A stretch of 64,000 nt of DNA from NCBI GenBank assembly GCA_965637545.1, contig OZ281494.1:682001-746000 (forward strand). Direction: 5' to 3'. The notes below the pieces were generated by a model. It did not search any database. It worked only from the letters and a program-made list of their open reading frames with translations, and had not been told where the DNA came from. Source of the stretch: Phallusia mammillata (lineage: Eukaryota). The position numbers and the translations under genes are program-made. Within the stretch, counting starts at the first letter, position 1. The number at the start of each line of letters is the position of its first letter. Of the stretch, positions 1 through 61,720 are shown piece after piece.

Positions 1-3000
1 CCTGTCATGTACAATAAAATATTCGCATTTTTGAAATAAATACCTTTAATTGATATTTTGTTTCAAAACTTAAGTTTCCAATTGTAGTCGATCCATCTAA
101 ATACGGTGTTGTATGTCTTTCGTTCAGGACCAAAACATGGATTTCAACCTAAGTACAACACATTTCTCAAACTATAAAAAATTAACCTGCTTTGGATAAA
201 TGTTACCACTGCACTGAGATTATGTTTATTAATGAATTGATCAAGCCCAGTCCATCTGACCACCACAGTTGAAGCGTTGCATGCATCTCTCTTCACTGTA
301 GCTTTGACTAAAAGTGAAATAATAAGTTTCATTAAAATGCAGCGACGGTTTTGCACTGCATGTTAAACTTGGTTTTATTGCTGTGCAGCAAAGGGAATAT
401 ACAAAACCTATCTCTGTCAATTTTCCCACAGCATTTACTCGGTCATGAGATTTCTAACCTGTGACTTGGTTATATTTGTTATTTGTCAACAATCACTGAC
501 GAGACAAACGATTTATTTGGGTCACGAAATAAATCATAACACAGAGATATAGAAGTAATATAGCCATGACAGTAAGCCGCCATTGCAGATTTTTTCGGGC
601 TTGATGCGGGCCGGATTTCACATTCTGTGTTTGTAATTTTCATCGAAAATGTTACCTAGCTATTAGTAACTTAGTAAATTGAAGCTTTCAGTACACCTCA
701 ATCAATCTGTGTTGATTATGATTATCTGTAACTTGAATCTGTATTGAGCGCACGTTGGTTCAGGACGATTTCTGTAAAAGCACAGTTTATACTAGCTATT
801 AGCAGTTAGTTGCTGGAGTTAACCTACTTCCAAACGGTGCCACTACTCTGAAGTTAGGGTGAAAAAAATGTCTTAATGATCAATAGCCTTTTGATAGAGC
901 TGCGGTTGATAACTGACGCATGATCAAATGTCGTATGACAGCGGGTGATGAAATTTCGAGTGTGAATAAACCGTGCTAAAAAAACCGAAACCGTCCTGTT
1001 TAAGGCATTGTCTATTTTTACCCATCATGAATGCCTTCTCTATTGTTCTTTCTAGCCTTACTTATTTTAGGTTTTCATGGTATGAATCTGTCAATCAATC
1101 TATCCGACACCAGCAAAACTTTTCAAATAAAAAACTGGGTACCTCAGGGCTCCGTACTGGCCCCTACACTATTCAACGTATACATCAGAGACATGTCTAA
1201 AACCAAATGTCTTAAATTCGGCTATGCGGATGACTGGGCACTAAGTTTTAAGGAAATTGTCTAACAAGGATTCAAAACCAACTCACAGCTAATCTCACCA
1301 CTCTCCGGGAATACTTCACGACATGGTATCTACAAATGAATACCACTAAAACAGTAACAACTCTTTTCCATTTGGACAATCATCGCGCAAACCAACAACT
1401 CAATATTATAATTGATGGAAAGCAACTGCCCACGGACCCCAATCCGAAGTATCTTGGAATAACATTAGACAGAACTTTAAATTATAGAGAACATTTGCAG
1501 AAACTATCCAACAAGATAAAAACTAAAAACTCACTGATCAACAAACTAGCAGCCACTAGATGGGGAGCAAGTCAATCAGTCCTCAGAACATCTGCCTTAG
1601 CTCTGTGTTACAGCTCTGCAGAATACTGTGCTTCAACATTGGAGCGTAGTACTCACACTAAAAAATTGGACATCCAACTGAACAGAACAATGCAAGTAAT
1701 TTCAGGAACTCTAAAATCCACCCCTATCACATGGCTACCAACAATGAGTGCAATACCTCCCCCACACTTACGACGCAGAGCATCAGCCATGAAGATGATA
1801 CAGAATCTTCAAACACTTCCAGAGGAAATTACCCTCACCAAGATTATAAGACAAGCACCAAAAACACGTAGACTAAAATCCAGGCATCCAATCTACAACT
1901 TAGAGACTGACAACACTTTCGATATGACTGAAGAATGGAAACAATATTGGTTTAATAACATGCCCGCTGGAGGAGAGCTAGTAGACGACCCAACAACTCC
2001 ACTGCCAGGTTTCGACTTAGCACATAGATGTCACTGGGTAGCAGCGAACCGACAGCGATCAAAACATGCTCGCACTGCCCACATGCTTCAACACTGGGGC
2101 GAAAGAACGAATTCGGAATACCCACACTGTGGAGCGGATAAGCAAGATACAGACCATCTTGTCCTAAAATGCCCCACAACCAAGTTACAAGGTGGATATC
2201 GGACAGTACATGAATGCGATACAGCATTCAGCGACTGGTTTCAAAATATATCCGATCACATCTAAGTTTTTTGAGACGTGGAAATCATACGACAATATAT
2301 ATATCAATCTAGCGGGTTTCAACCGCCTTTTCACAACCAATTCGGCTTCGGACTTAAATTTTTGGGTTACGTGTCAAAGGTCTGGGCCTCTTACAGCTAT
2401 GTGGCCTCAAATGTAGGTAAACTGCAGGGAAAACAACTTTACAAACCGTGGCTTGTAATTGAATGCATACGATATTCAATTTGTAAATCATATTATTAAT
2501 TGAGCTAGATTCAAGCCAACCAATTTGCCACATTACTCACGTTTCACTTGACAAGCATAGTAAGCCACTTCCCCTCTGCAGTTCATGCTTGACTGCTCCC
2601 ATCCGATCCCATAATGCAACGCTCCCTGCTGGCAGGTTGTAACGTTGGAAACAGGAAAGTTTGCCGGAGATCCATCACTCCAATACCAACCATTCAACGA
2701 GGCGTTGTAACGAGTTCCAATAATGACATTTATATCTTTAAACACAAAATTTGCAACAGATTTTACTATTGTAAAGAAATATCGCTTATATTTTGTGTTT
2801 AACTATCAACAGAAACTAACTTGGTGTTAGGAATGATCCTTTGGTTTTTGTAAATTTTTTATATGACTTTTTCACACTTCGCAGTTTGTATGCATTTCGT
2901 CCACCAAAATAAATAAAAATTTTCTTTTGGCGTTTTCTGGTATTGTCAGCAAATAATGTATAGCGTGACGTCCACCCTACAAACCGAAATTCAATAAAAA

Positions 3001-4167
3001 AGTGGATTTTAGTAATATGTAAGGTATTCCATCCAGTATTTGTTTGTAAACTATGTTTATTTTGACTTTAACACAAAAACCTCAGTAGGTTAGGTTTCAA
3101 ATGTAACTGCAAATGAGTCTAAACGCTAAAGAATTTTAGGAATAAAACGTAATATATAAATTTACAACTAACTACTCAACACAAACCATTCCAATTCCCT
3201 TTTTTATCCAAGCCTTCACAAGTTTTTCCGACAGTTACTCCCCACTTGTAGTTGGGTTGATTTCTCCAACAATCACAAAAATAGATCGGTTGTCTTCTGT
3301 TTTGCTGATTGCTAAAAAAATATTGTCAATAGTAAACGTAGCAACCTCCAATAACTACGGTTTAGTTAATAATTCAGCCTTCATTTTGTTGTTGACTGTT
3401 AGTGGATAGTTAATGTCAGATGTTATTACCTTTTATACAAGTCAAAATACCACAGATGTCCCAGAGATTTTGTCGTTTTCCAAGTTCCATTTTCAACCGG
3501 ACTTTTCGAGTATTTGTATTGTTGATAATCAGGTTTGTAAAAAACATAAACCCGTTGCAAATCTGAAAAAGAATCTTAAAAATCACATGATATTTGATCA
3601 TAAAAATTCACACAATGAAAAATTCATATGTTTGCTGAATTTGAAACGAAATTATTTTATTTATCTCGTTTTCTTGCTTCATCTTAACCTGTCGTATATT
3701 TGTCTGTCATGAGTTGAGTGAGAGTTGTGTTGATCTGTGGGTCATTAGTCATTGCAAGATTTCCACCCAGCAAAGAACATTTTTTCTGTGCATTGTTTGC
3801 ATGCCTTTCATCGTCAGATAATATCAACACACTGTCCTTCACTGTTTGGAAAGTCTTTCTGCAACCTGTGATATTTATTGGTTTAATTTGACCTGAAAAT
3901 TTTAGTGGCGTGTAAATTTGTTTGTAAGCGATTCTGAATGAATAATGTCTGGCACTTTAGATACAATTGTTACTAAATCCAAGATGAAAGTCACAAAGGT
4001 CAAAAATCGAGGCCCGTTTTCACTTGACAATATCTGGATTTCAAATACAAGAATACAAGTAAAAACAAAAACTTTTCATTATTGGAAACATGGTTGTACT
4101 TACTGTTGATTTGTCCTTTAGAATAATAAACCAATAGCAATATCATAAAAATATTGCTTCCTGTCAT
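1..4167 (-). CDS. Paralog A: 5' part of a multi-exon CTLD-FN3 receptor (probably a receptor PTP); continues off the left edge
   Basis: GT-AG exons in compatible phase: signal peptide 4104-4167 (MTGSNIFMILLLVYYSKGQIN); CTLD exon 1 3689-3865; insert exons 3430-3562, 3187-3311, 2821-2976; CTLD exon 5 2541-2735 (IIGTRY..GWYWSDG..C..GWEQ..C..YACQV); FN3 exons 207-307 and 44-148. The next acceptor falls at position 1. No stops in the visible exons. The cytoplasmic part is not in the window. Confidence 0.85.
1090..2470 (+). mobile_element. 5'-truncated, frameshifted non-LTR retrotransposon (RT C-terminal half plus CCHC-like tail), antisense within an intron of paralog A
   Basis: ORF 1031-1264 has PQGSVLAPTLFN and YADD. 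After a frameshift near 1245-1260, ORF 1336-2265 has PKYLGITLD, RWGA..LRTSALALCYSSAEYC and a degenerate knuckle (YPHCG..DTDHLVLKCP). Ends are approximate. Confidence 0.9.
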
Positions 4168-5299
4168 ATTGCTGACTTTAAGCTAAAAATAAAACTAAAT
4201 CAGTTTGTACATTTCTGCTGGTTTTATTGTTTGTTTGTTTTGTGTGCAAAGTCTTCTTGCAAATACGAACTTCAATTCAATTCAGTAACATAAACGGTTC
4301 TAAGTCGTCCAAGTAGATAAATATAGCCAAAACTTATAAGTCGAACACTGCCCCGGAAAATACGACATAAACATAGGGAACCACTTTCAAATAAAGTAAC
4401 TGATACTGGTCCTATTGTTTCATCTTGCTTGATGGTTTCTTGTCTACTGCGTCCTGTCAAACTCAAACCGCGAACCTATGTGCTTCTGCAAACCGATCCT
4501 CTAACATATCTGTCTGCTCGATGCTGCAATTCTTATTGCATTGTCTTTCATATAAGCTTCTTCCTTATAGTGGCGGGACTGTTTACGTCGAACTCATTTA
4601 TAAGAATGCGGAAGTTTTTTAACTTCGTCTACATTTGTTGAGTAAATATGGGCTTCACACCAAAAGCAGCAGGTATCACAAATCATGTACTGAATTGTTT
4701 TGGATGCTGGGCGCTTAAACTTAGCACTGTTCACCCGTGTTGGTTTCGATTCATTTAAAACATTCACATGTAATCCCACATCTACTTAGTGTGCCCTCAT
4801 ACGTCTTTTGTAAACCGACCGTGCGATAAATTTCGCGCTGTCAAGGTTTTTACTGTGGTTTGATTGTAAGTGAGAAACGTGGTAACTAAAAGCTTAACAC
4901 TGCAAAAACACCATGTCTACTAACCTTTGTGTTTAAACATTACTTACTTAGTCTGACTTTCCATTAAGGCTGCAAATATATTTCCAGGTTCCGGTGCGAC
5001 TACAACAAAACGTAATAGTTAAACAATAGAAATACAGCTCTTTATCGCCACCATACGTTAAAAGCGTCGTCAAACAACACCAGAAAGTTAATCAGTTAGC
5101 AACGTACAACATTAACGCAGTTTGAGAAAACAAAAATAGCTAAAATAGCACAAATTGCTACTGCAGTTAGTAAACTTGACGCGTATATTTGAACATGAGT
5201 ATAAGAATATGTCAGAATCAACCACAGAATTTTCGCTAAAATAAACATGTAAAATTTCACTGCTTAATTACTTCAGTATGTTCAAAGTAACAGGCAATA

Positions 5300-5712: not shown

Positions 5713-6778
5713 GTTTCCATCCTGCAAATATTTGTAAGTGATATCCAAGACATGAAATGAAAAAGAGTTTGTATCATCGTTACGAAGTGAAAAACCTGAC
5801 AAACCTAAACCATAAACAGTAGAAAAAAGGTTTTGGTTACAATATACTATTGTGATCCAACAAACGTTACTGAGGTAAGTAGAACACCAACCGTTTCAAT
5901 TTCCTTTGTTGTCTAGGCCTTCACAATTGCTTCCAATGGTCACATTCCACTTTTCCATTCCCCTGTTTTTCCATGTCTCGCAGAAGTAAATTGCTTCCAT
6001 CGTGTTTTAAAGATTCCTGACAAATGTAAGTCGGTCTAATTAATAGTGACAAGTTTGTAATTAACTGTATTTCACCTTTTGTACAAGTCGAAATACCCAG
6101 ATGTCCGTAAGATTTTGTACTTTCCAGAAATCCACTTCAGCCGAATTGTTTGAGTGTTTGCATCGTTCATATGTGACGGGGTCATAAAAAATATAAAACC
6201 GTTGCAAATCTAACGGAAAGTTTCTTTATTTAAATAAGTTTTTTTTTCTATCTAGTTGATTTGCATTGATTAATTTTAAGCGTTTGTTTTGAAAATGTAA
6301 TGTTTTTACAAACCTGTAGTGTATTTGTCTGTTATGAGTTGAGTGAGAGTTGTGTTGATCTGTGGGTCATCAGTTATTGCAAGATTTCCACCCAGCAAAG
6401 AACATTTCTCCTGTGCAGTGTTTGCATCCACAAGATCGTCAAACAATATTAACACACTATCCTTCACTCCTTGAAAAGTTTTGTAAAACCTAGAAAAATT
6501 GTTTTATGTAATAAATTGTTCAACGCATTACCACGCTTGATTTTGGGCAATTGCAGTGCATGTGGCTGAGTAAATTGCAAAAATAGGCAGAATGAAATAG
6601 CCCAACGAACAGATATTAACAGTTTGGTAAGAAAAAGTCGACTTACCTTGGATAGAAACCAAGTAATCAGATATTAACACTTTAAAAAGTAAAACAGACA
6701 CTTACATTTAGTTTGTGCGGTTATAACTTGAACCATCAGGGAAATAACCACAATCGTGCTGATGTAAGGCCAACTCAT
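5710..6778 (-). pseudogene. psiA': pseudogenised 5' half of a CTLD-receptor paralog
   Basis: Signal exon 6706-6778 (MSWPYISTIVVISLMVQVITAQTK). CTLD exon 1 (~6314-6489) has a 1-nt deficit and has lost its first Cys. Insert exon 2 (~6076-6206) has two 1-nt deletions. Insert exon 3 (~5894-6020) has TAA and TGG>TGA stops. Exon 4 is cut after a few codons at the hAT junction (~5712). Confidence 0.85.
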
Positions 6779-9967: not shown

Positions 9968-12900
9968 TCACTTGAAGTTTGAATAAGTGTCGAAATCAGA
10001 CAGATACTGCAAGACGACTGAGTAGCAGTATTTGTACAGTTCCTGTAACAAAATGTATTCAATATTATGGGAAAAGTTTTAATATTTCAATCCAGAACAT
10101 TAAATAAACACAGAATTTAATCTTGCTTGTTCAGAAGTCAGAAATATGAGACCAACTTTCAGTATTCCTATTTGCTTTATTACATAAAACATTACCTTGT
10201 TGTCGACCATATTCGGTCTCATATCTCTCAGGTCTTTCACAGTTCGGAATACATCCACCCGCTTTTGTGCCTTCAAACGTTCGAGAATGTTCACCAGAGC
10301 GATGAAGGTCCCAGTTCTTGTTGATCCGTTACTGCAAATAAATCAAGTTGATTGGATTCGGTATTTTGAAAGTTTATACCAGAAAAAAACGGCTCTAGAA
10401 AAAAAAAAACGTTTTTGGATAATGTCAAAGGTGTCTAAATTGATATTGTTTGCAAGACTTTTTAACTTGAGGCATAAAGCAGTTTGGGAATGATAAAGTC
10501 GTTTACTTAACCGAAATCAAATGTACATTTCAGGTAGTTTGGTTTTAGAATTGATGCTGATATGCAGAAATATTGTTTACCTGCATCCCACCAACACACA
10601 CTGGCAAATCTGTTTTGCATTTAGTCGTTGCATTTCCTCGATAATTTTAATGAAGTCCATTTCTTTCGGGGGTCGTTTCACGTCACTCCATCCCTTGACT
10701 TGCAGAAGCATCAATTGCTGGGGAGCCTAAAATACGGAGTACAAAGATTCAATCGGAATAATATTGTACAAGAGATTTGAGATTCTATTATATTATCTAA
10801 TCTAACAAAACATAGCAACAAGGCTGCTTACAAACGCCTTGGTTGCAGACCAGACGTTGGCAGTGATCAGATTGTGAAGTTTATTCTCATTCACATCACG
10901 AACCGATACCGAAATGTCTTCGTATTGTAAAGCTGCATTGATTGGAATCTGAAAACGATGTTGTTTTAGTCAATGTTTAGTCAAACATTTTTACGCTGCT
11001 TTTTAGGTTTACTTGAATGCTGTTGTCCAAATCAACGACAAGTGAAGCTCCTCTGTCCACGATCATCTTCCAAAAGTTTTCTTCTTCTCCTGGAGCAGGA
11101 TTTCTTGCTGCGACAAAGAATTCTGAAGACCCTTGTTCCTGTATGTTGTCAAAACAAAGAAAGAGCATTTTTGGAAACGAGTAAATGTATTTTAACTACT
11201 TTAAAAAACAACAACAAACATTTACACTGAGAATGTAAATTTTATTCTGACCTGGATATAGGAAGCATCCAGCTGTTCAATGCTTTGGCTTTTATTGTCC
11301 AAAACTTTCACCGCCGTGTTCTTGTCTGAAAAATAACATGACCTGTAATTCGTGAGTAAGTAAAATATTGTCATCCATTTGTTTACATGTTCTGAGCTGT
11401 GGGTGGTTTTCCTGCCATTCTTCCCCAAATCTCCACGATGACAACGTGTTGAATTCTTTGTTTTGCATTTGCTGGCTATACAAGTTAAACCATTGGCTAA
11501 TTAGTGAATTACCACAACAACTCCTATACGAGTTTGACAGTTTATATTACCAACATGTATGCATTAATTCACTTCGTTGCTATAAAATTGCTTACAAATC
11601 ACTTGAAGTCATAGACGGGAGTTGAGTTACATCTTTATCTGTTTCCTCCAAACATTCGCGCTCCATGAGCAGTTTGTAGACAAACATGTATTGTTTCTAT
11701 AAATACACAAAGTTGGTAAGTGATGGGTATTTAATATCCAGTGTGTTGGCTGAAGTTGATTTACTTATTGTAAGGGTTCATTTCTGAGACTTACCGAATT
11801 TTGAATCATGTCGATTCGGTTCTCTCTCATTTTCAGAACGGATCTTGGCACGTCAACTGATCCCTTGTCGTCAAATTCATGAAACAAACTGTCCATCGCT
11901 ATGTAAGTACCTGTGCGTCCCACTCCAGCACTGCATACATATGTGTAGTTGATTGATCAAAACAACATAGGGTTTGTCAAGCCTTTACCTGCAGTGCACA
12001 ATGATTGGAGCATTTGTGTTTTGCAAATCATCGACCATGTTACGTAGGTGGATCATGTTGGATGTAGTTACTGGAATCCCATGATCGGGCCAAGTTGTAA
12101 ACTGCAACTGTGTTATGGTTCGTTGTTCCTAGGGATAAAACTCGCGTGATCATGTGATTAAGTTTCCTTCATGAAATTTTGCATGACAAAACCCTAATGA
12201 TAATCAAGATACTTAGAAAAGTAGGTTTGTTTTCGTTAATGCTACAAAAACTCAAGAAAATATTGTGTAACTTTCTACCTGCTATTGTTGTTGTCCAATC
12301 TCATGCCAGTTTTATTTTGCATGAAAACTTTATACGATACCGTTTGAGTATAACAAATATCTGTTAGACATTCACTTTTTTAAACAAGTTTACACATACC
12401 TTGGTTGAAGACAAAACGAACTGTCGTTGAACGATGCCACCGATGGTTACTTCATGTTGTGTTCGAACTTCCAAATTCGACATCTTAAGTTCGGATTCAT
12501 TATCAGGCCAATACTGTTCACACTTTGACTGCATGTAAAACACGTTGAAGAAGGGATAACTGTTTCTGAGTTTGAATACATTCAAACCCGACATTTTTAA
12601 CACGAAAGCAATGCCGATAGTTACCTTTCCGTTTTCCACCAAGCCAGTAAGCATTACGATGATGTTGGAGTTTTCCTGCCAAACCATCAACCAGAAATCG
12701 TTGATTGTCTCCTTCTTCGGACCCTGAGTGGCGATGAACTTCCTCTCGTTATCGTAACCCGGTATATAAGCGGCGTTGATGTAATCGTTTCCACCGCTTC
12801 CTTGCAAAACCACTCGAGCATGATCGTCTATTGAACAAACACAAGTCAAATCGACAAAATAACCTTTTCCCCGCAATTTTGATGAATGGGAAAAATCAGC

Positions 12901-17895: not shown

Positions 17896-19010
17896 TGCAG
17901 CGTCTGTTTCGGTATCGACTAAAAACAATACACAAATGATGTTTATCCTGGTAAAAGAGGTAAACGTGCTGATAAACTCAATCATGTTAACGACACGACT
18001 TCGTATACATCCTGGCCTAACTTTACTATAGACTCACAAAACGTTTCTACATTTGCTTGCTCTGCATTTGTGACTAACGAAGACTTGTTGCTTTACCTCT
18101 GACTAATTGTCTCTACTTCAGTTTCTTGTACGTAATAAATATGATTTATTGCATCGAATGCATCACGATACCACTGACTGTAATTTGAACTAGTTACAAG
18201 GGTTAGCTCTGGAGCATTTGTACAGAGCTACGATTTCGTCATACGCGTCACATTTCCTCATGCATATATCACAGTACGAAGGTTTGCACAATCTTCAAAC
18301 TGAATCACGCAGTTTCTTGTAACATGACCCAGACTAGAAAACTTTGCAGTAGCCGCTGTAATTCGAATATTACCAATCAGTAGCGACTTACTTACCATAC
18401 CCTATGAAATTCCGTTCGAATGGAAATATACAAACCGTAAGCTTTGTCTGATAATTTACGTTTAATTATGTAAGATGTATATTTGTCGAGGGTGGAACCT
18501 GTGAAAATATTCAAGGCTAGTGAGTTTAACACGTAGCAGTAAACTTATCTTACTCCATTTTCTTTCCTGTTTTTATATACGTTTAGAAAGCTGAATAAAC
18601 GGCATGGCACCGAAAAAACGCACATGCGGTTTGTGGACTTGTGTCTTCCAAGCCTTCAAGTTTTGCAGAATGTAATAAATGGCCATATAAGTATTGAAGT
18701 TAAATAATTATTAAGTCACACACACTCTATGGCGCCCTCAGTGTTGTTGTATCTTGAACTTCAGTATTTAAACGTGGCAGTTTCGAGCGGGTTGTTGGTG
18801 TCTTGTGAAGGTCACGCGTGATTTTTCTGATGGTTTTCATGACGGTAAGCGAAAGTTGTGATTAAATTGTTTTCAGCCTTAATATATATTTTTTCAATGT
18901 GTCTTTTGAAAGTCAATCTAGTACGGTGTTGTTTCGTTGCATGTTTTTCTTTTGTACTAAATTGATAATCTTGCGTACTCTATTCCGACAAAGTACTGGT
19001 AGACCCCTTT

Positions 19011-34982: not shown

Positions 34983-35099
34983 AATGTCATACTAATATAT
35001 CAATGTCATATCGAAATTAGCACATAGTGTGGTATTTTCCTTCCTTTTATGTAATAATGCACTGATACTGTTACAAAAATTGAGCTCTGGCTACTCTGT

Positions 35100-39009: not shown

Positions 39010-39027
39010 GTGTGTGTGTGTGTGTGC
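39010..39027. repeat. (TG)n microsatellite
   Basis: About 9 TG units read directly; adjoins a GC-rich segment at 39028-39180. Confidence 0.9.
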
Positions 39028-45754: not shown

Positions 45755-45881
45755 AGCCGACCGCACGATCCTGGCAGGGTAGGTCCTGTTGCATAAGACA
45801 GTAGTTGAACTCGCGAGTTTTGTTGGCCCAATGAAACCCGCCTTAACAGGAAACTTCAGCGCGGTTCCTCGGAACGTTTCC
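45752..45881. repeat. 130-bp direct repeat, right copy (partner 43531-43660)
   Basis: Same sequence as the left copy; continues as unique GC-richer DNA to ~45990. Confidence 0.92.
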
Positions 45882-45999
45882 TGTGATCCTGTAAACAGGC
45901 CTGGGTGCACGAGGACATCCTTTAGCGCGATGAAAATGTTGCCATCGAGCATCTATTCCCCACGGTTTGTAGAATCGAAGGCGAGATCTAGTTCATTGT

Positions 46000-47126: not shown

Positions 47127-50100
47127 TCATTGGAAGTTTGAATAAGTGTCGAAATCAGACAGATATTGCATGACGACCGAGTAGCAGTATTTGTACAGTT
47201 CCTGTCAAAATAAACTTTATTTGAAGAGATGTCTACTTATCTCGCCTTAGCCCAAAGAAAAACGTTACCTTGTTGTCGACCATATTCGGCCTCATATCTC
47301 TCAGGTCTTTCACAGTTCGGAATACATCCACCCGCTTTTGTGCCTTCAAACGTTCGAGAATGCTGACCAGAGCGATGAAGGTTCCAGTTCTTGTTGATCC
47401 GTTGCTGGAAACATATCAATATATATTTATCTTGTCAACATATTTATGATTTAGAAACTTTCATTAGCAGTCCACTTTTGACTAGATAACAAATAGTTGT
47501 AGCGAATCTCCTTGTCTTGTGTCAACTGAAAACATAATTTTACCTGCAGACAACCAGCACATATTGACAAATCTGTTTGGCCTTTAGCCGTTGCATTTCC
47601 TCGATAATTTTGATGAAATCCATTTCTTTCGGGGGTCGTTCCACGTCATTCCATCCCTTGACTTGCAGAAGCATCAATTGAGTATCAGCCTGAAAACAAT
47701 TAAAGCTAAGTTTCATTATGCATGTTATAAAACTGGTGTTTAAATGTTAAAAGTCGGTATGTTGATCCGAGCAGTTACGCAAATTTTGAAATAATGCTAT
47801 GTTGTGAAAGGTATTTTTGGGTTGTTTTTTGATAGATTATGTACTGATATGTTTTCACACATTAGACCACCACAAACTTTGTAGTTTAGAAGCAATGCTG
47901 TTCTAAAGTTTTTAACTTACAAAAGCGTTGGTTGTTGACCAAACGTCAACAGTTGTCAGATTGTGGACATTGCTTTCATTTACATCACATACAGAAACCG
48001 AAATATCTTCGTATTGTAAAGCTGCATTCACTGGAATCTAAAAACAATTTTATGTTTTAATACGTAAAGAAATTGTGATTTGAAAAAATGACAGTCTTAC
48101 ATTAATGCTATTTTCCAAATCAATGACAACCATAGCTTTTTTCTCCACAATCATCTTCCAGAAATTTTCTTTTTCTCCAGCAGCAGGATTTTTTGCAGCA
48201 ATGAAACATTCTGAAGATCCTTGTTCCTGTATTTAAAACTGGATTAAAGTAGACTAAAAGAATCAGCTAATAACAATGTTTTGTCACAAGTGCAAAGATC
48301 ATTTAAATTCTGCCGTGCATGTAAAGCATTAAAAATTGTTGACATTGTACCTGGACGGTTTGCTACTGATCTATGAGTGTAAAAGTATTGATACAATACA
48401 TACGCCACCAATTGAAATTGAAACCGTGATGTGATTTGAAACATTCTATTTTGTATTATCACCTGAATATACGAGGCATCCAGTTGCTGTATAATCTCAA
48501 GTTTTTTGTTCCAAATTTTTACTGCTGTGTTCTTATCTGAACACAATATTTCATGTGCTTTAAAGGTCAAACATTGTGACAAATTCACTTACATGTTCTT
48601 AACTGTGGGTGATTTTCCTGCCATTCCTCGCCAAATCGCCACACTGACAATGTTTTGAATTCTTGCTCTTGCATCTTCGTGCTGCAAAACAAAAGCCTAA
48701 TGCGCGCTCACATGTAAAAGCTGGTAGCAGTTTAAACAATAAACTCAACAAAGTGACAACTACCAATGTGGTACACCCACAAAATGCTTGCAAGGAATTA
48801 AAATTGTATACTAGTAATGAGCCATGTGTTGTGATTAAAGAACAACAAAATGAGTTACATTTCACTTGAGGTCATCGATTGTAGTTCTGTCACATCTTTA
48901 TCTGTTTCAATTAAGTTCTCACGCTCCGTGAGAAGTTTGTAGACGTACATGTATTGTTTCTGAAGAAAAACAAATTTAGAAAAAAAAATCTATGATTGAC
49001 GTTGCTGGTCTTAGTTGCATCATATGCCCCCCCTCTAGAGCAGTTAACATGTGGAATTTGTGCCCAATTCCTTCTTGTCGTTTTTTTATAGTTAAGTTAA
49101 CGTTGGCAGCACATTACCGAGTTTTGAATCATGTCTGTTCGGTTTTCTCTCATTCTTAACACAGTTTGTGGCACATCAACTGTTCCTTTGTCGTCAAGTT
49201 CTTGAAACAAAGTGTCCATCGCTATGTAAGTACCTGTGCGTCCCACTCCAGCACTGCATTTAAACGTTGGGTTTACTGATTGGTCAAAATAACACAGGGT
49301 TTGTCAAGTCTTTACCTGCAGTGCACAATGATTGGAGCATTTGTGTTTTGCAAATCATCGACCATGTTACGCAGGTGGATCATGTTGGATGTAGTTACTG
49401 GAATTCCATGATCGGGCCAAGTTGTAAACTGCAACTGTGTTATGAAACGTTGCTCCTGAGAACGAAAACAAGTAATTGCATCAATTATTACGTCATTTTT
49501 ACTGAAAAAGGAACGTGTCACCCACACGCCGTGCAATGTGTGAGTCAAGAAAACATTAGGTAACGAAATTTTAGGAAGACAAATACTAGTTTGTTGATCA
49601 TTTACGTTTTATGGTTACATTTTCGTTATTTACACAAACCCTGGTTGTGGATAATTCGAACTGTCGATATGTGATTCCTCCGAGACTTGTCTCATGTTGT
49701 GTTCGAACTTCCAGATTCGACGACAATTTGATTTTGGAGTCCATATCAGGCCAATATTTTTCACACTTTGTCTGCAGTTAAAATATATTTTGTTATTTCT
49801 AGACCAGTGGTTCTCAACCCGTTTCAGGCCATGGACCACCGACGCAGCAAAAACAATATCGTGGACCATTACATTTTTAAGCAAGATTGAAGTAGGCCTA
49901 TAAAATAATCATGTTTGCTTGAAACATAATAATTCAAAACCTATTTACAATAACATAAAAGTTATTGTCCACGATCACTGAGTCAAAACTTATTCACTAA
50001 ATAAATAATTAGGAAGCAAATGCTTTTGACTCAAATTCAGTAGACACTGAAAAGAAGTGAGATTAAATAACTGACAACAAACACGCTGACCGTTTTTCAA

Positions 50101-53100
50101 AATACAATATGCGAAAAACAGTTTTTCACCAAGTTTAGTAGACGTCCTGTGGACCACCCAAAAACTCTTCGTAGACCACTAGTGGTCTATGGACCACGAG
50201 CTAAGAACCACTGGTTTAGACAAACAAAATACTCGTTTTCCATTAACTCCGTGGCAGATTTGATTTTGTCAATCAATGAATATTTGCCACATAACAAACT
50301 CAACTCTTCCTTTTTCCACCAAGCCAGTAAGCATTACGATGATGTTGGAGTTTTCCTGCCAAACCATCAACCAGAAATCGTTGATTGTCTCCTTCTTCGG
50401 ACCCTGAGTGGCGATGAACTTCCTCGCGTTATCGTAACCCGGTATATAAGCGGCGTTGATGTAATCATTTTCACCGCTTCCTTGCAAAACTACTCGGGCA
50501 TGATCGTCTATTGAACAAACGCCATTAATACTGAGATTCATTACACCTGCAGAAGTGTTACAACAAACATCCACTGTAGCCAATAAGGTATCACATTAAA
50601 CTAATACAAGTAAAATAGCAAAACCAACTATCCTAATAAAAATAATAAAAACAAAACAAAAAATGAGGATGTGAATTGTGTTATGTCGCGGAAACAAATG
50701 TGCAACAGCTATGCCAGTAATAAATCAAGGGATTTACAACACAACAAAGTGACTTTTCCCGAGACTTTGATCAATAGGAAATCAGCCAATTTCATATACT
50801 AATTTGTTAAACTCATTTGTATTTTGTATTTCAATACTTACAAGGGAAAATATTCTTGTAGCGGTTTCTTACAGCATTTTGCGGCAATTGTGACACGTCC
50901 CTTGTTCTCTGGTTGTTTTTGCTTTGGTTTTCGACTTCCTGAAATGGTTAAATCCAGTGAAAGGAGTTTTCAAGGTTTGATTGTTTTCTTGTTGAATTGC
51001 TTGGACGTAAATGTTGATTATAGTTTTCTCTAACCTTAAATTCGTTGACAAATAGTAGTCCTGACTCAACATTTTTCTTGAACACTTCAAACAATTTGGT
51101 GACTCTGCAGTTTTTTGAGGGGACAACAGAAGGAGATAGATTTTCGTATATCACGGGTCCTGTTGAAACCATTATGTACATTTCAGCATGGCTCTATGGT
51201 ATTGTTTTCATCAATTTTGTGAAACTCTATTAGTTAATTAGCAACTTTCGATAGAGAAAGTTACCTGCGGGTGACATTTGCGATGAAAATTCCACGTGTG
51301 AAGGCGGATCTTTATTATTTCTGCAAAAGCAGAACAGCTTTGAGTTAAACTTTTTTAGTTGGTCATGTTTCTATTTAATTGTTCTAAATTTCAGTTCTGA
51401 ATAATTCGTGATCTAAATTTCAGTCGGTGGTAAAAATTTGGTTACCGGGCATCATGAGCAGAAGAATTTTGTCCAAAATGTTTTGATCAAAAATATCTAA
51501 AACATATTTATGTTTTGTGAGCCAAATTAGTTAATGACAAACCTGTTTCGACGTTTAATCATAACCACCAGCACAGCAATGACAAGTACCAGAAGCAACA
51601 GCCCGATCACCAGACCAGCAATCATTCCAACACTAGTCCCAGGATTTGTTCCAGGATAACAGTTTGGAGGGGGATTTCCCAGAGTTGTTACTGTCAGATT
51701 TGATGTGATGTTTGTGTTGATTGAACCAGTGACTATGGATGTAATCTGTGATACAAAAAAATAATTTCAGTTTAATTTTCAACAAAACGATTTTTAAGAT
51801 TTTTTTCTGTTTATTTTTGCTTGGTCAAATATGAAAGAGAACAAGTCCTTACCAATATTTCATACAAAGTAGAGTGAAGGAGATCTTCTATCATAGTTGA
51901 TTTATTGCAATAAGGAACAGAGATTGTTTGATTCAAACCCTGGCCTTCAATTTCAACCTGTATGTAATTTGGATGCAATGATGAATTTAGTTTTTTTTTC
52001 AGCAAAATTGTCACACTTTCAGGTTTGTTTATCAAACAATGAAGACTCAAAAAACAACAACAAAGAGTTTCCAATAGACCTGCGCTAACAGATCGTTGTT
52101 GATGAGGAATTGATCAAGTCCAGTCCACCTGACAAGCACATTTGAAGCGTTGCATGGAAATGTCTCTGCAGTCGAGTTTACTGGAATGAAAAATTTACTG
52201 TTTCTGTTTTACAAAACTTGCAGTAATTCAACAAATATTGCAGGCGTTTTAAATATCGTGTTTGTTAATCACTTGTCTGCATTTCATATGTCTGTTTAAT
52301 TTTACGAAAAATGTTACCTGCAGGATAGCAGCTTTGCGGGGGAATACCCGGAGTTGTTACTGTCACATTAGATGTGATGTTTGTGTTGATTGATCCAGTG
52401 ACAATTACTGTGACCTGAAAGACATCAAACACGTAACTAGTCTTGTAGGTTTCACCTTAAATGTGTTAAATCAACTCTCAATGGAAAAAAATTCACCTGA
52501 ATCTCGTACAACGTTGAGTGACTGAGATCTTCTATTAAGGCCGAATCGCTAAAGTACGGAACTGAAGTTGATTGGTTTAAACCCTCGATGTTTATCTGAA
52601 CCTGCATGTAGTTTGGTTACAAATATTTGTTTGAGAAACACACAAACTTGCTGTCAACCTCCGCCACGAGCTCGTTGTTGTTGATGAATTGATCAAGTCC
52701 AGTCCAACTGACAAGCACAGTTGAAGCGTTGCATGGAAATGTCTCTGCAGTCGTAATTACTGCAATACATAATAATAAGCCACTGATTATGGATTGCAAA
52801 GTTAGAGAAACACTTTGCCTGTTTCTTACAAATTGGGGTCGCTAAATACTTAAAAAATTGCATCAGTGTTTACCTTCAGGGTAACAACTTGAAGGGGGAT
52901 TACCCGGTGTTGTTACTGTTGCATTGGATGTGATGTTTGTGTTGATTGAACCAGTAACAATCACTATGACCTGAAATCACAAACATACCTTTTGTTTATG
53001 TACATGTTACGTTCCGGTTTCCGGAAAAGTTTATTAACGTTATTTTTCTGCTAAAACAGTGATTACTCAATTAACAAAAACACAGGCGACAGGCTTTTAC

Positions 53101-56100
53101 CTCAATGACATACGAAGTAGAGTGAGTGAGATCTTGTATTGTTGTGGAGTAGTCAAAATACGGAGCAGAGACTGTTTGATTTAAACCGTCCACTTGAATT
53201 TCAACCTGCATGTATACTGACATCAAATAACCGTTTAGCCACATACAAACTTGGTTTATACCAGAGCTGTTAGATTGTTGTTGTTGATGAATTGATCAAG
53301 TCCAGTCCAACTGACAAGCACAGTTGAAGCGTTGCATGGAAAAGTCTCGACAGTCGTGTTTACTGCAATGCAAATAGGAAAGAAACATTGTGTCTGGTTT
53401 TTAAAGTTTGTGTTTGCTAACATAGTTTGCTCGCTTCTTCGGAATTGTTGTTGCGAAACACTGGTATGAACTATGATTATTTTCCATACCTTCAGTGCAA
53501 CACTAAACCAAATTACGTTTGGTTTCTGCAAAAATTTTTACCTTTAGGGTAACAACTTTGGGGGGGATTGCCCGGAGTTGTTACTGTCAGATTGGATGTG
53601 ATGTTTGTGTTGATTGAACCAGTGATAATTACTGTGACCTGAAATACTCAAATTACGTAAATACATTCCGATAAAAAAGTAGTTGATTGTAAATAAAAGG
53701 TGTCCTGCAACTACTTCGATTAACTCAAATAGGAAAAAAGTGTTTTCACCTGAATTTCATAGAATGTTGAATACTCTAGACCTTCTATTAAAGTCGAATT
53801 GTCAGAATATGGAACAGAGATTGTGTCACTTAAACCCTCGACTTGAATCACAACCTGTTTTAGTTTCGTTTTAAATGGTGGTTTAACAAACACAAACTCG
53901 GTTTAAACCTGCGCTGTTAGATTGTTTTCGTTGATGAATTGATCAAGTCCAGTCCAGCTGACAAGTACAGTTGTAGCGTTGCACGGAAATGTCTCTGTAG
54001 TCGCGTTTACTACAAAAAGGTGTTGTTAAAGTTTAAAATTCAAATTTCACAGGTGACTTGTTTGCTTACATGGAGGATAGCAACTCGATGAGGGATTTCC
54101 ATACGTTGTTACTGATGTGGAAGTTGAGACGTTGGCGTTTATGCATCCAGTCAGCATTGTAGTAACCTGTTTTTATGTTTTCTAGTTAAGCTATTTTTGA
54201 TTAAAGTATTTTGAAACTGTTTTCGTGTCCGTTATTTTCTGGGTAAATTAGAAAACTAGGTTGTAGTCCAATAACTTAATTTATATTTAGGTATACTACA
54301 GGTTAGAACATTCTGTGCAAATATAATAGTACAATAGCACTTGTCGAAGCGTAATCATGTTTTGTACAAAAATTCTGGCTCTGATTTTTTTTTGTTATTG
54401 AGCTGGCCATTCATACTCAACAATTAAATTTCAATAAATTGTGTTAAAATACTTTCAAACACACTTTACCTCAAAATTATATTGTGTTACAAAACTTAGG
54501 TTTCCAATGGTTGTTGATAGATTTGCATACGGTGCCATAATTCTTCGGTTGAGCTCCAAAACATAAATCTCAACCTAAATACAACATTTACAAAATGTTC
54601 AAATCGGGGATATTAGAAAAACGATTGCGGTATTGCAACTCTACAGAACAGTGATTGTCGAAGGCCTCTGGATTGTGCCAACCTCTTCCTCATAGCTGAT
54701 GTACTATCTCCATTCTCGAAGATTTGTTTCAGTATTGAAGCGATATTTAAGAATAAATTAACATGCAGCTCTGAGTCCATTAAAACAGAGCATTTGTTTA
54801 TTCGCAGGAACTTGCTTTAGCCTCGCTTGACCCCTCCAAACACAGCTCCTATCATAGTTGTGGACAAAACTTACGTAATTTAAATTGGGTAAACAAAACG
54901 TCTTGACAGATCCGCTGGGTGGAGCTCTGTAGCGAATCTACATACCCGCGATTGTGCCTTTTTCTCGCATTATCTCTTTGATCGTGTTTGTCGCGCGTAA
55001 AGTGTTGTTCTTTTTTAATTTTGCCTATAAACACCGAACTCTCGCCATTACGGTATATAATCTGTTACCTCTGCGAGTAGATCATAGCTTTCGATAAACT
55101 GATCAAATCCAGTCCAATTGACCACCACAGTTGAAGCGTTGCATATATATTTATCCACAGAAGCTGTGACTTAAAAGTAAATCATCTGGTCAAATGTCTA
55201 TTTCGAAAGAAAATCAAATTAGATTTCAAAATTTCAAATTAGCTATAATATTACCAGGGAACATCGCAACATAATAGACGCTGAGTTTCAAATAAAGCAA
55301 ATCAACTTAAACAGATTGTTTGAAGTTTGCTCTCAATTTCGAATCAATTAAATACTTACATTTTACTTGGCAAGCGTAGTACGCCGGTTCACCACTGCAT
55401 TGCAGGCTTGACTGCTCCCATCCGATCCCATAATGCAACGCTCCCTGCTGGCAAGTTGTAACGTTGGAAACGGAAAAGTTTGCTGGAGATCCGTCGCTCC
55501 AAAACCAACCATTTGACGACGTGTTGTAACGAGCTCCGATTAGAACGTTAATGTCTGAAACCATTTATGCGATGAATTTTTATGACACGAGCGACAGATT
55601 TTTATGGTTGCAAGTTTTTGAAACCAAACGCTCACCTGGTGCCAGGAACGATCCATTATAAGTTGTATAGGTTTCATACGTTTCGTTAACACTCCTCAAC
55701 TTGTTTGCACGTGGTTTCCGTTCATAATTGAATATATCTTTTTGGCGCTTGTTAATGTTAACATCGGAAAACAAGGAATACTGAAATATCCATGCTACAA
55801 ACGAATAGATAGCCTTATACAAGGTTTTGTTTTGACTAAAATAGGAATATATATGAAAAAAAAACGTGTAGGTTAGTGTGATGTAGATAGCAAACTCCTG
55901 AAAAATAAATGTTTAAAAACCGGTTGTTTCATGGAATTTTCGACTGCCGAACTTTTATTCGATGCTTGACACCATGACCACTTCACAACGCTGTTTGTTC
56001 TCCTGCTTTTGTTATTTTTTTGGTAACCACACAAGTGCTTATTAGCCCTCTGTTCACTTATATTCATGTAATAGTTCTAACGCTTTGTTACGGTCCTTAG

Positions 56101-57269
56101 GTACAAGATTCATTTTTGCGGTTGCCCAGTTACATTCCGCTATGTGGACATAATAGTCTTTTTTATTGTGCGTTGGTAAAGGTACTTGAAAACGTAACGT
56201 TGGTGGTGTGATATACTAGCAAGTGTTTAGCGCCGAGCATTTATTCTATATCGCTATCCTATGGTACAATCGGATTTACTCCACGTTGAATTCTCAAACC
56301 TATTTCTGCTGGTGTGGATATTGCTCAGTTCAGAATCAATAAAATCAATAAAGCGTGGAAAACGACTTGTTATTTCCATGTGTTAATGACCTCGCGTGCC
56401 AACCTTTTTTCAATATAACAATGGTTCGAGCCAGCTGATATCAATAATAAAAAGAAAGCAGAGCGTTTTGTGTATGTAAAGCTAAATTTTAAAAGTCGAA
56501 AGCCTTATTACTTACAGTGTATCTCACAATCTTCTCCAACAGTTACAATCCACCTCTCATCATTAGGACCACTTCCAAAATTGCAGAAGTAAATTTGTTG
56601 CATGGTGTTTGTAGTATTGCTATTTAACAAATTGCATGTTTTTATGATCAGGTGTGTTAATGTCAAAATCTATTACCTCTTATACAAGTCGAAATACCAC
56701 AGATGTCCGAGTATTTCAGAACTATTCCAACCTTCTTCAATCGAATTAAATGAGTATTTGTAATACGTGTTGTAAAAAATATAAATTCTCTGCAAATCTG
56801 AAACGATGTTTGTTTACTAATTTTTATCACGAGTATCAAAATGAAATGTGCAGCCATGAGTAAGGTCGTTGATGCAATAATGATTTAATTTTTAAAACCT
56901 TTTTTGTTTAATAAGTTTCTTTTCAGATTTGGAGAATACCAGTTGGGGTACTTTCATCTGCCCAAACCTGTCGTGTATTTGTCAGTCATGAGTTGATTAA
57001 GAGTTGTGTTGATCTGTGGGTCATCAGTCATTGCAAGATTTCCACCCAGCAAAGAACATTTCTTCTGTGCATTGTTTGCATCCACAAGATCGTCAGATAA
57101 CATCAACACACTGTCCTCCACTGCTTGCATGGTTTTGTTACAATCTGACAAAGAAATGAATGAATGTCATAGCGTTGCTGTGATTGTTTACAGTATTCTA
57201 CTTCTTACTTGCAGCTGATGACCATTGCGCAAGCAGCATCACGAAAAACGCCACAGTCCTGTTTATCAT
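47127..57269 (-). CDS. Paralog E: complete receptor-type PTP with five FN3-like repeats, about 36 exons
   Basis: Signal exon 57209-57269 ([20 protein letters not shown]); CTLD exon 1 56968-57144; insert exons ~56677-56797, 56516-56619, 55637-55792; CTLD exon 5 ~55359-55553; five FN3 triplets ~51545-55170; [30 protein letters not shown]1 has [38 protein letters not shown]2 has VVCSNGSTR and ends FDTYSNFQ* at 47127. Confidence 0.9.
49805..50213. mobile_element. hAT-type MITE (409 bp) in a D1 intron of paralog E
   Basis: Ends CAGTGGTTCTCAAC...GCTAAGAACCACTG; flanks TTCTAGAC / GTTTAGAC (6/8 match); GGACCAC subterminal repeats and palindrome TAGACCACTAGTGGTCTA. Confidence 0.85.
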
Positions 57270-61470: not shown

Positions 61471-61537
61471 AGATTTATTAATGAAAATGCAGCAGTTTTG
61501 ACAGTTTCAACTACAGCTTGGCACGGTTTTTACCAAC

Positions 61538-61720
61538 CTGTTGTGTATTTGTCTGTCATGAGTTGAGTTCGAGTTGTGTTATTCTGTGGGTCATCAGTCA
61601 TTGCAAGATTTCCACCAACCAACCAACATCTCTCCTGTGCAGTGCAGTCTGGTGAATCCACAAGATCATCAGATAATATCAACAAACTGACCTTCACTGC
61701 TTTCATTGTGTTGTGGCCAT
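61538..61720 (-). pseudogene. F: isolated CTLD exon 1 homologue
   Basis: 183-nt phase 1-1 exon ([43 protein letters not shown]) with AG/GT sites. First Cys lost, 6-nt insertion. No downstream family exons before paralog E. Confidence 0.75.

What the first reader, a model, noticed from the sequence alone, without database searches (positions are those of the whole stretch)
1..61720. Tandem array of lectin-domain receptor tyrosine phosphatases with phosphatase-less sister receptors: candidate paired-receptor recognition locus
Seen: at least nine same-strand copies of one gene family. Three are full CTLD-FN3-TM-D1-D2 phosphatases (B, C, E), two have ectodomain and TM but no PTP exons (B', D), one runs off the window (A), and three are relics. 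In both cases a PTP-less copy lies directly downstream of a full phosphatase (C then B'; E then D). Known: vertebrate RPTP ectodomains use Ig, FN3, MAM, carbonic-anhydrase or cadherin-like modules; I know of no characterised RPTP class with an N-terminal CTLD. Clustered paired receptors with variable ectodomains, differing tails and rapid birth-and-death are typical of immune and self-recognition loci. Inference: this is a lineage-specific recognition system in which a variable lectin-like head controls a phosphatase, with decoy or adaptor-type partners.
Basis: partly seen in the sequence, partly recalled or inferred. Interest (0 to 1): 0.9.

Follow-up and report, generated by a model that had tools for sequence, protein, structure and literature searches.

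The report
Tandem lectin-domain tyrosine-phosphatase receptor genes
This 62-kb stretch, most likely from a sea squirt, holds nine tandem copies of a receptor gene that couples a lectin-like, fibronectin-stalked outer part to a tyrosine phosphatase; one phosphatase-less copy is really transcribed, but the family type is already present, unstudied, in other sea-squirt genome annotations.

Summary
Nine same-strand (minus) units are present. B (30 exons, 1206 aa) and E (36 exons, 1403 aa) are intact signal peptide–CTLD-like head–FN3 stalk–TM–D1–D2 phosphatases. C has the same build but carries an in-frame TAA in its second FN3. B' and D end after the TM exon, A runs off the window, and three units are relics.

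RNA contigs show that B' is transcribed and spliced with GT-AG introns. D has a 7-nt deletion at its TM exon and no RNA support.

- The lectin-like exons are the most conserved parts (91–92% amino-acid identity), not the variable ones.
- dN/dS is 0.18–0.37 in every segment.
- The B' tail comes from DNA with no counterpart in the other copies.
- Receptor phosphatases with C-type lectin domains are annotated, as "uncharacterized", in Styela, Ciona, Phallusia and Clavelina.

The window's D1–D2 falls inside an ascidian-only phosphatase clade, but its ectodomain has no detectable relative among the ascidian proteins fetched.

Best reading: a birth-and-death array of a lineage-specific receptor phosphatase family, with one expressed truncated paralogue that probably acts as a phosphatase-dead competitor. 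I found no paper describing such receptors. Other first-stage notes of this scan (untested) report similar clusters elsewhere in this genome.

The parts
9971..17895 (-). Gene B: intact receptor phosphatase, 30 exons, 1206 aa. Order: signal peptide, CTLD-N exon, three middle exons, CTLD-C exon, 3 FN3 repeats, TM, three juxtamembrane exons, D1, D2. TGA follows 9971.
   Evidence: All introns are GT-AG and there is no stop. The D1 motifs KNRY, WPD and VHC|SAGVGRTG are present. Pfam PF00102 E=1e-31 on 12367-12981.
18404..23040 (-). Gene B': transcribed phosphatase-less paralogue. ATG at 22746. Exons: 22769-22677, 22373-22197, 22044-21912, 21851-21748, 21354-21190, 21105-20911, 20646-20546, 20475-20371, 20115-20019, 19953-19853, 19784-19680, 19545-19349 (TM), and 19143 onward (tail, stop near 19010). 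The 5' UTR reaches beyond 23040.
   Evidence: RNA contigs of runs X1, X2 and X4 carry CT..AC joints at these borders. The ORF is 560 aa and open. Introns 20370-20116 and 19852-19785 are inferred and have no clean joint in the contigs. The TM segment has Asn where the other copies have Ile or Met.
24529..32758 (-). Gene C: same build with 2 FN3 repeats, 27 exons, 1119 codons. It has an in-frame TAA at codon 423 (exon 29814-29714) and uses an ATG four codons upstream of the one in B and B'.
34299..38231 (+). Non-LTR retrotransposon (ORF1 34299-34982, ORF2 35100-38231) between D and C. It is not part of the family but sits where D's 3' part would lie.
   Evidence: Pfam RVT_1 3e-35 and Exo_endo_phos 3e-10.
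39652..43049 (-). Gene D: signal peptide, head, 2 FN3 and TM (43049-40135), no PTP exons. A 7-nt deletion at the start of the TM exon means the canonical donor gives a stop. A possible tail exon at 39762-39652 carries YENY and NPTY.
   Evidence: No RNA run holds more than 5% of its words.
43677..45952 (-). Orphan cassette: a piece like the CTLD-C exon plus three FN3 repeats, with no signal peptide, no CTLD-N and no TM exon. 43661-44926 is 87% identical to E's 52910-54177.
47130..57269 (-). Gene E: intact receptor phosphatase with 5 FN3 repeats, 36 exons, 1403 aa. TGA follows 47130.
41..4158 (-). Gene A: signal peptide, open head and first FN3 exons. It runs off the window start.
5923..6778 (-). 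Relic r6: signal-peptide exon, CTLD-N exon, first middle exon and part of the second. Nothing follows downstream.
61538..61720 (-). Relic r61: a single degenerate CTLD-N exon.

Best explanation
This is a birth-and-death tandem array of a lineage-specific (ascidian-type) receptor protein tyrosine phosphatase family.

Each full gene (B, E, and C apart from its stop) encodes a type I membrane protein with these parts:
- a signal peptide;
- a head built from two very conserved half-CTLD exons separated by 126-141 more variable residues;
- a stalk of 2-5 FN3 repeats, each a 303-nt module of three exons;
- one TM helix;
- a juxtamembrane YxN motif;
- a D1 with all catalytic motifs;
- a diverged D2.

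Shown: the exon structures, intact frames and motifs; transcription and splicing of B'; and the clade membership.

Inferred:
- Unequal crossing-over between the repeated units made the differences in FN3 number, the truncated copies and the relics.
- Gene conversion or strong constraint keeps the CTLD and D1 exons alike.
- Ligand binding by the head and stalk positions or regulates D1, as in other receptor phosphatases.
- B' is an expressed partial duplicate that ends in a new 45-aa tail taken from unrelated DNA. It most likely acts as a phosphatase-dead competitor (a decoy or dominant negative) for the same ligand or for dimer partners.
- D, the C allele in this assembly and three fragments are decaying copies.
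For: - Gene models are fully GT-AG: B 1206 aa and E 1403 aa without stops, C with one TAA.
- PF00102 hits. D1 carries KNRY, WPD and VHC|SAGVGRTG. D2 has WSD or WND and a Cys-X5-Arg motif.
- FN3 profile hits on every repeat: E 5, B 3, orphan 3, C 2, B' 2, D 2.
- CTLD evidence. The joined CTLD-N and CTLD-C exons score 33-38 bits as one domain against a profile of 65 CTLDs. The CTLD-C exon gives 98 of 100 named Atlas hits as Lectin_C. PDB hits are KLRG1, Dectin-1 and CLEC4A4, weak but at the right positions.
- B' RNA: spliced contigs in three runs from two studies.
- B' branch has 21 synonymous against 33 non-synonymous changes, B has 18 against 20, both below my rough neutral expectation of about 1:3, which I did not compute.
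- dS is uneven: 0.22-0.40 in the CTLD exons against 0.66-1.56 in the middle exons. D1 exons are up to 97.8% identical in DNA.
- Homology between B' and B stops at the TM exon donor.
- D: 7-nt deletion and at most 5% RNA words.
- The ascidian-only D1-D2 clade has SH-aLRT 100.
Against: - No ligand, tissue or activity data exist.
- B's own 5' exons had no RNA contig in the runs laid. The co-expression needed for competition is therefore not shown, and those runs were chosen for holding B'.
- The two FN3-internal introns of B' lack a clean joint, and one contig keeps the 68-nt intron, which breaks the frame.
- An X4 contig leaves the reference at 19090 for 45 letters not found in the window, so the true 3' end of some B'-like transcripts is unknown.
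- The slightly higher N/S ratio on the B' branch would also fit relaxed constraint.
Confidence: 0.6

Rival explanations
1. Paired-receptor recognition locus. Full phosphatases act as built-in inhibitory receptors. The phosphatase-less sisters act as activating or adaptor-coupled partners for the same, possibly polymorphic, ligands, as in NK-cell receptor pairs.
For: - B' shares a closely similar ectodomain with B and is expressed.
- Its TM has a B'-specific polar Asn.
- D has a possible tail exon with YENY and NPTY.
- The full genes carry a juxtamembrane YxN.
- Untested first-stage notes report other clusters in this genome with phosphatase and dual-tyrosine tails.
- A DNA-like run shows 40- to 120-fold excess depth over the conserved exons, which suggests a very large family.
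Against: - The CTLD exons are nearly invariant, and mean dN/dS is 0.19-0.37 in all head segments.
- The B' tail is translated from AT-rich DNA without homologues and has no ITAM or hemITAM.
- Asn is not a charged adaptor-binding residue.
- D lacks RNA support and is frame-damaged.
- No expression site or ligand is known.
Confidence: 0.2
2. B' and D are functionless by-products of unequal crossing-over. On this view B' is a transcribed pseudogene that still has its promoter.
For: - The duplication breakpoint lies exactly at the TM exon donor.
- The tail is read from non-homologous DNA.
- Intron-retaining contigs exist: the 60-nt intron in X1 has stops, and the 68-nt intron in X4 shifts the frame.
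- D is decaying.
- Relics are common in the array.
Against: - The B' ORF is open over 560 codons.
- Its non-synonymous to synonymous ratio of about 1.6 is well below my rough neutral expectation of about 3.
- Canonical splice sites are kept at all eleven joints that could be shifted to GT..AG.
Confidence: 0.15
3. Variable-exon locus. The B' (and D) ectodomain-plus-TM cassettes are alternative 5' modules spliced onto the downstream gene's phosphatase exons, as in clustered protocadherins or UGT1A.
For: The TM exons of B' and B end in the same phase, so such a joint would be in frame.
Against: - The only joint seen from the B' TM exon goes to 19143, 205 nt downstream.
- Contigs run on over 18404-19078, like a 3' UTR, with AATAAA at 19015.
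- Each full gene has its own ectodomain.
Confidence: 0.04
4. Assembly artefact: the truncated copies are mis-joins of a collapsed or expanded repeat.
For: One DNA-like contig joins 21964 to 17081, a B'/B hybrid path.
Against: - Contigs of run X7, at a single-copy depth of about 135-155, tile the unique parts of the B' unit and its flanks.
- RNA contigs match B'-specific sequence.
- The copies differ by 5-30% in DNA.
Confidence: 0.01

Closest known systems
Predicted ascidian receptor phosphatases with C-type lectin domains (Styela clava LOC120336018, LOC120336141, LOC120336013, LOC120335592; Ciona intestinalis LOC100183702; Phallusia mammillata A0A6F9DQN0; Clavelina lepadiformis 'Lar-like' P0226)
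   Same: Type I receptors with Lectin_C domains outside and tandem PTP domains inside. Their D1-D2 share an ascidian-only clade with the window's genes. Several Styela genes lie on one 31.3-Mb scaffold.
   Different: - They carry 2-3 ordinary contiguous CTLDs, often with Ig or EGF domains.
- The window's head (half-CTLD exons around a 126-141-aa stretch) and its FN3 stalk find no relative among them.
- D1 identity is only about 43-48%.
- All are named 'uncharacterized' or after automatic best hits.
Vertebrate R4 (PTPRA/PTPRE) and R2A (LAR/PTPRS) receptor phosphatases
   Same: A D1-D2 tandem with an active-type D1. These are the best solved-structure matches: PTPRS 2.5e-37, PTPRE, LAR, PTPRA. 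A tyrosine in a YxN context recalls the Grb2-binding Tyr789 of PTPRA (from my own knowledge).
   Different: The ectodomains are unrelated. The window's genes are not orthologues: the vertebrate PTPRA/E rows group with the Styela and Clavelina sushi-domain proteins, and with the amphioxus rows next to them.
Paired NK-cell receptors with C-type lectin-like domains (Ly49, NKG2/CD94, NKR-P1) and Botryllus fester/FcoR pairs
   Same: Clustered, duplicating receptor genes whose sisters differ in the tail. Inhibition runs through tyrosine phosphatases. Ascidian paired receptors with ITIM or hemITAM tails are described in PMC12065747.
   Different: - NK receptors are type II proteins that recruit SHP phosphatases through ITIMs, and their activating partners use a charged TM residue.
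- Here the phosphatase is fused to the receptor, the partner has Asn in the TM and no known motif, and the binding-domain exons are conserved rather than diversified.
Truncated products of receptor phosphatase genes (for example phosphacan and the short form of PTPRZ)
   Same: An ectodomain made without the catalytic domains that can compete for ligand (from my own knowledge).
   Different: Those arise by alternative splicing of one gene. B' is a separate duplicated gene with its own promoter region and its own terminal exon.

Membership tests
Classical receptor-type protein tyrosine phosphatase (tandem D1-D2) | PTP catalytic domain (Pfam PF00102), present twice | tested here: met
   PF00102 E=1e-31 and 7e-11 on exon pieces. 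Spliced alignment to PTPRE-type proteins covers D1 and D2 in B, C and E.
Classical receptor-type protein tyrosine phosphatase (tandem D1-D2) | D1 catalytic motifs: KNRY, WPD loop, VHCSAGxGRTG, Q loop | tested here: met
   [21 protein letters not shown]|SAGVGRTG (split by an intron) and MIQNSKQY are present in B, C and E.
Classical receptor-type protein tyrosine phosphatase (tandem D1-D2) | Signal peptide and a single TM helix between ectodomain and PTP domains | tested here: met
   Hydrophobic N-terminal exons start with ATG. There is a hydrophobic stretch of about 23 residues followed by RRR. The Pfam TM-segment hits are weak.
Classical receptor-type protein tyrosine phosphatase (tandem D1-D2) | Phosphatase activity | not testable with these tools
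   Needs an enzyme assay.
C-type lectin-like domain (CTLD) | Sequence match to a CTLD profile | tested here: met
   - Single exons give no Pfam hit.
- The joined CTLD-N and CTLD-C exons score 33-38 bits, E about 1e-11, as one domain against a profile built here from 65 CTLDs.
- Atlas: 98 of 100 named hits are Lectin_C.
- PDB profile hits are weak: 0.028 and 1.2.
C-type lectin-like domain (CTLD) | Four canonical cysteines and the WIGL / WxWxDG motifs | tested here: met
   One Cys lies in the alpha-1 region of the N exon. LIGA, W(Y/F)WSDGS and three Cys lie in the C exon. All are invariant in six copies, except that C has WYWGDGS.
C-type lectin-like domain (CTLD) | Calcium and sugar-binding motifs (EPN or QPD, and WND) on a long loop | tested here: not met
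   Only about 11 residues lie between WSDGS and the next Cys. There is no EPN or QPD, and WEQ stands in place of WND. Sugar binding is therefore not implied.
C-type lectin-like domain (CTLD) | One contiguous domain | tested here: not met
   126-141 residues encoded by three exons lie between the halves and are kept in the B' mRNA. Two readings remain open: a nested insert, or two degenerate tandem CTLDs. A fold prediction of the spliced head could not be run.
Fibronectin type III repeat | Match to an FN3 profile | tested here: met
   A profile built from 723 FN3 domains of fetched phosphatases hits every repeat. Whole-stalk E values run from 1e-15 to 7e-6.
Ascidian-specific receptor phosphatase radiation | D1-D2 groups with ascidian proteins to the exclusion of other animals | tested here: met
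   A 30-row clade has SH-aLRT 100. The FastTree D1 tree gives a 13-row clade with support 97. The window's branch is long (1.45).
Ascidian-specific receptor phosphatase radiation | Homologous ectodomain | tested here: not met
   Profiles of the head, the middle stretch and the stalk find no ascidian relative. Only generic CTLD matches appear.
Paired activating/inhibitory immune receptors | Sister genes with like ectodomains and different tails, side by side | tested here: met
   B' and B are neighbours. Their CTLD exons have dN of 0.02-0.10, and the tails are unrelated.
Paired activating/inhibitory immune receptors | Both partners expressed | tested here: inconclusive
   B' is expressed. No contig lay on B's 5' exons in those runs. 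D holds at most 5% of words in any RNA run.
Paired activating/inhibitory immune receptors | Activating partner with a charged TM residue or a tyrosine activation motif | tested here: not met
   B' has Asn, not Lys, Arg or Asp. Its tail has no ITAM or hemITAM. D's YENY/NPTY exon is unconfirmed.
Paired activating/inhibitory immune receptors | Diversifying selection or high polymorphism on the binding surface | tested here: not met
   Mean dN/dS is 0.19-0.37 in all head segments. The highest pairwise value is 0.66, in the second middle exon between B and B'. Population data were not available.
Variable-exon cluster (protocadherin / UGT1A type) | Upstream variable exons spliced to shared downstream constant exons | tested here: not met
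   The B' TM exon joins an exon 205 nt downstream. Only 6 kb could be laid, so joints to B's PTP exons were not looked for directly.

The most novel reading that the evidence does not exclude
The conserved head and FN3 stalk form a mobile ectodomain module present in about a hundred or more copies in this genome. It is coupled to alternative outputs: a fused tyrosine phosphatase, tyrosine-motif tails, or almost no tail. These receptors would act as a paired inhibitory/activating recognition system of a tunicate, in which the inhibitory arm carries its phosphatase directly instead of recruiting one through an ITIM.
Probability: 0.15. Interest if true: 0.85.

Novelty: new variant of a known kind. 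Interest (0 to 1): 0.55.

Why it matters
Receptor tyrosine phosphatases are classified by their ectodomains, and none of the described classes has a lectin-like head.

This work shows that such receptors form an unstudied, ascidian-wide radiation. In this genome one branch has become a fast-turning tandem array with FN3 copy-number change, exon homogenisation and at least one expressed phosphatase-less paralogue.

Such an array gives a natural series for two questions. One is how ectodomain length and a catalytically empty competitor tune a receptor phosphatase. The other is whether tunicates use fused phosphatases where vertebrate immune receptors use ITIMs.

If the truncated copies prove to be mere by-products, the locus is an ordinary example of birth-and-death evolution.

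Tried and rejected
- **Regex for a contiguous catalytic motif.** It found nothing because an intron splits VHC|SAG. Spliced alignment resolved this.
- **Pfam on single ectodomain exons.** This gave no Lectin_C or fn3 hit. I replaced it with profiles built in scripts.
- **One exhaustive protein search with a D1 piece.** It found no protein of this species. The best identity was about 47-57%, so no database id exists for the spliced proteins.
- **The 30 loose letters shown after 19090 in the X4 contig.** They match nothing in the window.
- **Splicing of B' onto B's PTP exons.** Considered, but the seen joint goes to 19143.
- **A two-tandem-CTLD reading of the head.** The first middle exons add only 2-6 bits and the cysteine pattern favours a split CTLD, but this reading is not excluded.
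- **The middle stretch.** No relative was found among the fetched proteins or in the Atlas.
- **Eight literature searches.** They found no paper on lectin-domain receptor phosphatases. My memory of sea-urchin 'PTPRLec' genes could not be confirmed in the library.
- **TM-to-juxtamembrane joining.** A first model was out of phase. A conserved 56/65-nt exon solved it.

Full report
**Setting.** The window has 35-38% G+C and no gaps. All family members lie on the minus strand. Self-BLAST shows only direct repeats. There are eight copies of a 180-bp block at 84-95% identity, six of a second conserved block, many FN3-like blocks, and three phosphatase regions. A motif scan found three WPD loops (49419, 26556, 12092) and five W-x-W-S-D-G-S sites. 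A sixth copy, in C, reads WYWGDGS.

**Gene models.** No protein of this species is in the searched libraries. The best D1 identity was 47-57%. I therefore wrote a protein-to-DNA aligner with GT-AG introns. I anchored the ectodomain on RNA evidence for B' and the cytoplasmic part on PTPRE-like proteins.

A first TM-to-juxtamembrane join was out of phase. Aligning the three introns revealed a conserved 56-nt exon (65 nt in C) that restores the frame. The final models, with every intron GT-AG, are:

| Gene | Exons | Length | Stops |
|---|---|---|---|
| B | 30 | 1206 aa | none |
| E | 36 | 1403 aa | none |
| C | 27 | 1119 codons | one TAA at codon 423 |

The exon order is:
- signal peptide;
- CTLD-N exon (177 nt);
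- three middle exons (121-133, 104-125 and 156-168 nt);
- CTLD-C exon (195 nt);
- FN3 repeats of 101+105+97 nt, the last third of the final repeat being fused to the TM exon;
- three juxtamembrane exons;
- six D1 exons and six D2 exons.

In C the stop replaces the Gln of the G-L-D-Q-F-I motif in the second FN3. C also starts at an ATG four codons upstream of the one used by B and B'.

**Domains.**
- *PTP.* PF00102 scores E=1e-31. D1 has RNRY, WPD, VHC|SAGVGRTG and the Q loop. D2 keeps Cys-X5-Arg but has WSD or WND and lacks KNRY and the Q-loop glutamines. dN/dS is 0.25-0.26 for D1 and 0.18-0.24 for D2, so D2 is also constrained.
- *FN3.* A profile built from 723 FN3 domains hits every repeat: E 5, B 3, orphan 3, C 2, B' 2, D 2.
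- *Lectin-like head.* The two flanking exons are 91-92% conserved among the copies. Joined, they score 33-38 bits as one domain against a profile of 65 CTLDs. Reverse searches hit the Pfam Lectin_C regions of the Styela proteins across the exon junction. The C exon gives 98 of 100 named Atlas hits as Lectin_C. PDB profile hits are KLRG1, Dectin-1, the mannose receptor and CLEC4A4, at the right positions but weak.
- *No sugar-binding motifs.* The loop that carries EPN or QPD is short, and WND reads WEQ. The domain is lectin-like in sequence but has none of the residues that define sugar binding.

**The stretch between the CTLD halves.** It is 126-141 residues long and is kept in the B' mRNA. 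It is open in six copies. It has no recognisable relative. The four canonical cysteines lie in the two flanking exons, which favours one CTLD with a nested insert. A reading as two degenerate tandem CTLDs gains only a few bits but is not excluded.

**Phosphatase-less copies.**

*B'.* RNA contigs from runs X1, X2 (one study) and X4 (another study) carry joints that become GT..AG on the minus strand at eleven borders. One 1206-nt contig links the 5' exon through the CTLD-C exon.
- With the two inferred FN3 introns, the ORF is 560 aa and open.
- It ends in a 45-aa tail after the TM exon, and AATAAA lies at 19015.
- Homology to B stops at the TM exon donor, so the tail is new sequence.
- The TM has Asn where the other copies have Ile or Met.
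- Changes assigned by outgroups give 21 synonymous and 33 non-synonymous on the B' branch, against 18 and 20 on B. Both are below my rough neutral expectation of about 1:3, which I did not compute, so B' has been constrained.
- Caveats: one contig keeps the 60-nt intron, which has stops. One keeps the 68-nt intron, which shifts the frame. One X4 contig leaves the reference at 19090.

*D.* Its head and stalk are open. However, a 7-nt deletion at the start of the TM exon gives a stop with the canonical donor. Its TM exon donor is GTGCCT. Its putative YENY/NPTY exon is unique in the window. No RNA run holds more than 5% of its words, against 14-21% for the B' stretch. tblastn finds no PTP remnant behind B' or D. 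A LINE lies behind D.

**Evolution of the array.** dS is 0.22 and 0.40 in the CTLD exons, 0.27-0.36 in D1, and 0.66-1.56 in the middle exons. Some D1 exons are 97-98% identical in DNA while neighbouring introns are about 70% identical. This fits gene conversion or strong constraint on those exons. No segment shows a mean dN/dS above 0.37. The variable parts are the middle stretch and the FN3 number, not the lectin-like exons.

**Relatives.** The D1 trees place B, C and E in a clade that otherwise holds only ascidian proteins (support 97; SH-aLRT 100 for 30 rows). This clade is separate from the PTPRA/E orthologues. Many members carry Lectin_C domains with Ig, FN3 or EGF:
- Styela clava, about fifteen proteins, several on one scaffold;
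- Ciona intestinalis LOC100183702;
- Phallusia mammillata A0A6F9DQN0;
- a Clavelina lepadiformis protein.

All are named 'uncharacterized' or after automatic best hits. Eight literature searches found no description. A review of Botryllus allorecognition describes unrelated paired Ig receptors with ITIM or hemITAM tails, and mentions only CD45-like phosphatases.

**Family size.** In the DNA-like run X7, unique parts of the stretch have a depth of about 135-155. The CTLD-N, CTLD-C and first FN3 exons reach 6,000-17,000. This points to very many near-identical exon copies in the genome. First-stage notes report similar clusters 311 kb and 15.6 Mb away with other tails. I could not test those notes.

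**Verdict.** The locus is a real, lineage-specific receptor phosphatase array undergoing birth and death. One truncated paralogue is expressed and constrained. The paired-receptor reading is possible but lacks its defining features so far.

Noticed in passing
window 34299-38231 (+): Apparently intact non-LTR retrotransposon: a 227-aa ORF1 and a 1043-aa ORF2 with endonuclease and reverse-transcriptase domains. It lies between D and C.
   Followed up: partly
window 61209-61282 (+): Rfam tRNA match (38.8 bits) in the G+C-richer 60-62 kb stretch. ARAGORN does not call it, so it may be a tRNA-derived repeat or a pseudogene.
   Followed up: no
window 17250-17450, 20450-21050, 22050-22450: In the DNA-like run X7 the summed contig depth over the conserved family exons is 6,000-17,000, against about 140 in the flanking unique DNA. 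This suggests on the order of a hundred near-identical exon copies genome-wide.
   Followed up: partly
window 21964 joined to 17081: One X7 contig (depth 89) links the first middle exon of B' to that of B, with 7 other letters between. It is either a B'/B hybrid haplotype from unequal crossing-over or an assembly-graph path through shared words.
   Followed up: no
window 19090: An X4 RNA contig matches the B' TM exon and 53 nt of the tail exon, then continues for 45 letters that occur nowhere in the window. There is no GT at the break. It may be another allele or a close paralogue elsewhere.
   Followed up: partly
window 21852-21911 and 19785-19852: Two very short introns (60 and 68 nt) are retained in some RNA contigs. 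The first contains stops and the second shifts the frame.
   Followed up: partly
window 29714-29814: Gene C carries a TAA in place of a conserved Gln codon in its second FN3, while its 14 cytoplasmic exons are intact. It may be a recent null allele.
   Followed up: partly
window 1336-2265 (+): A 309-aa ATG-initiated ORF on the opposite strand, inside an intron of gene A, with no convincing Pfam match.
   Followed up: partly
window 12625-12827, 27233-27435, 50305-50507: One D1 exon is 97-98% identical in DNA among B, C and E, while the introns around it are about 70% identical. This looks like exon-scale gene conversion.
   Followed up: partly
window 13382-13437, 28910-28974, 51265-51320: A small conserved juxtamembrane exon (56 nt, 65 nt in C) that homology to other phosphatases does not reveal. 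Without it the frame between the TM and phosphatase exons is lost.
   Followed up: yes
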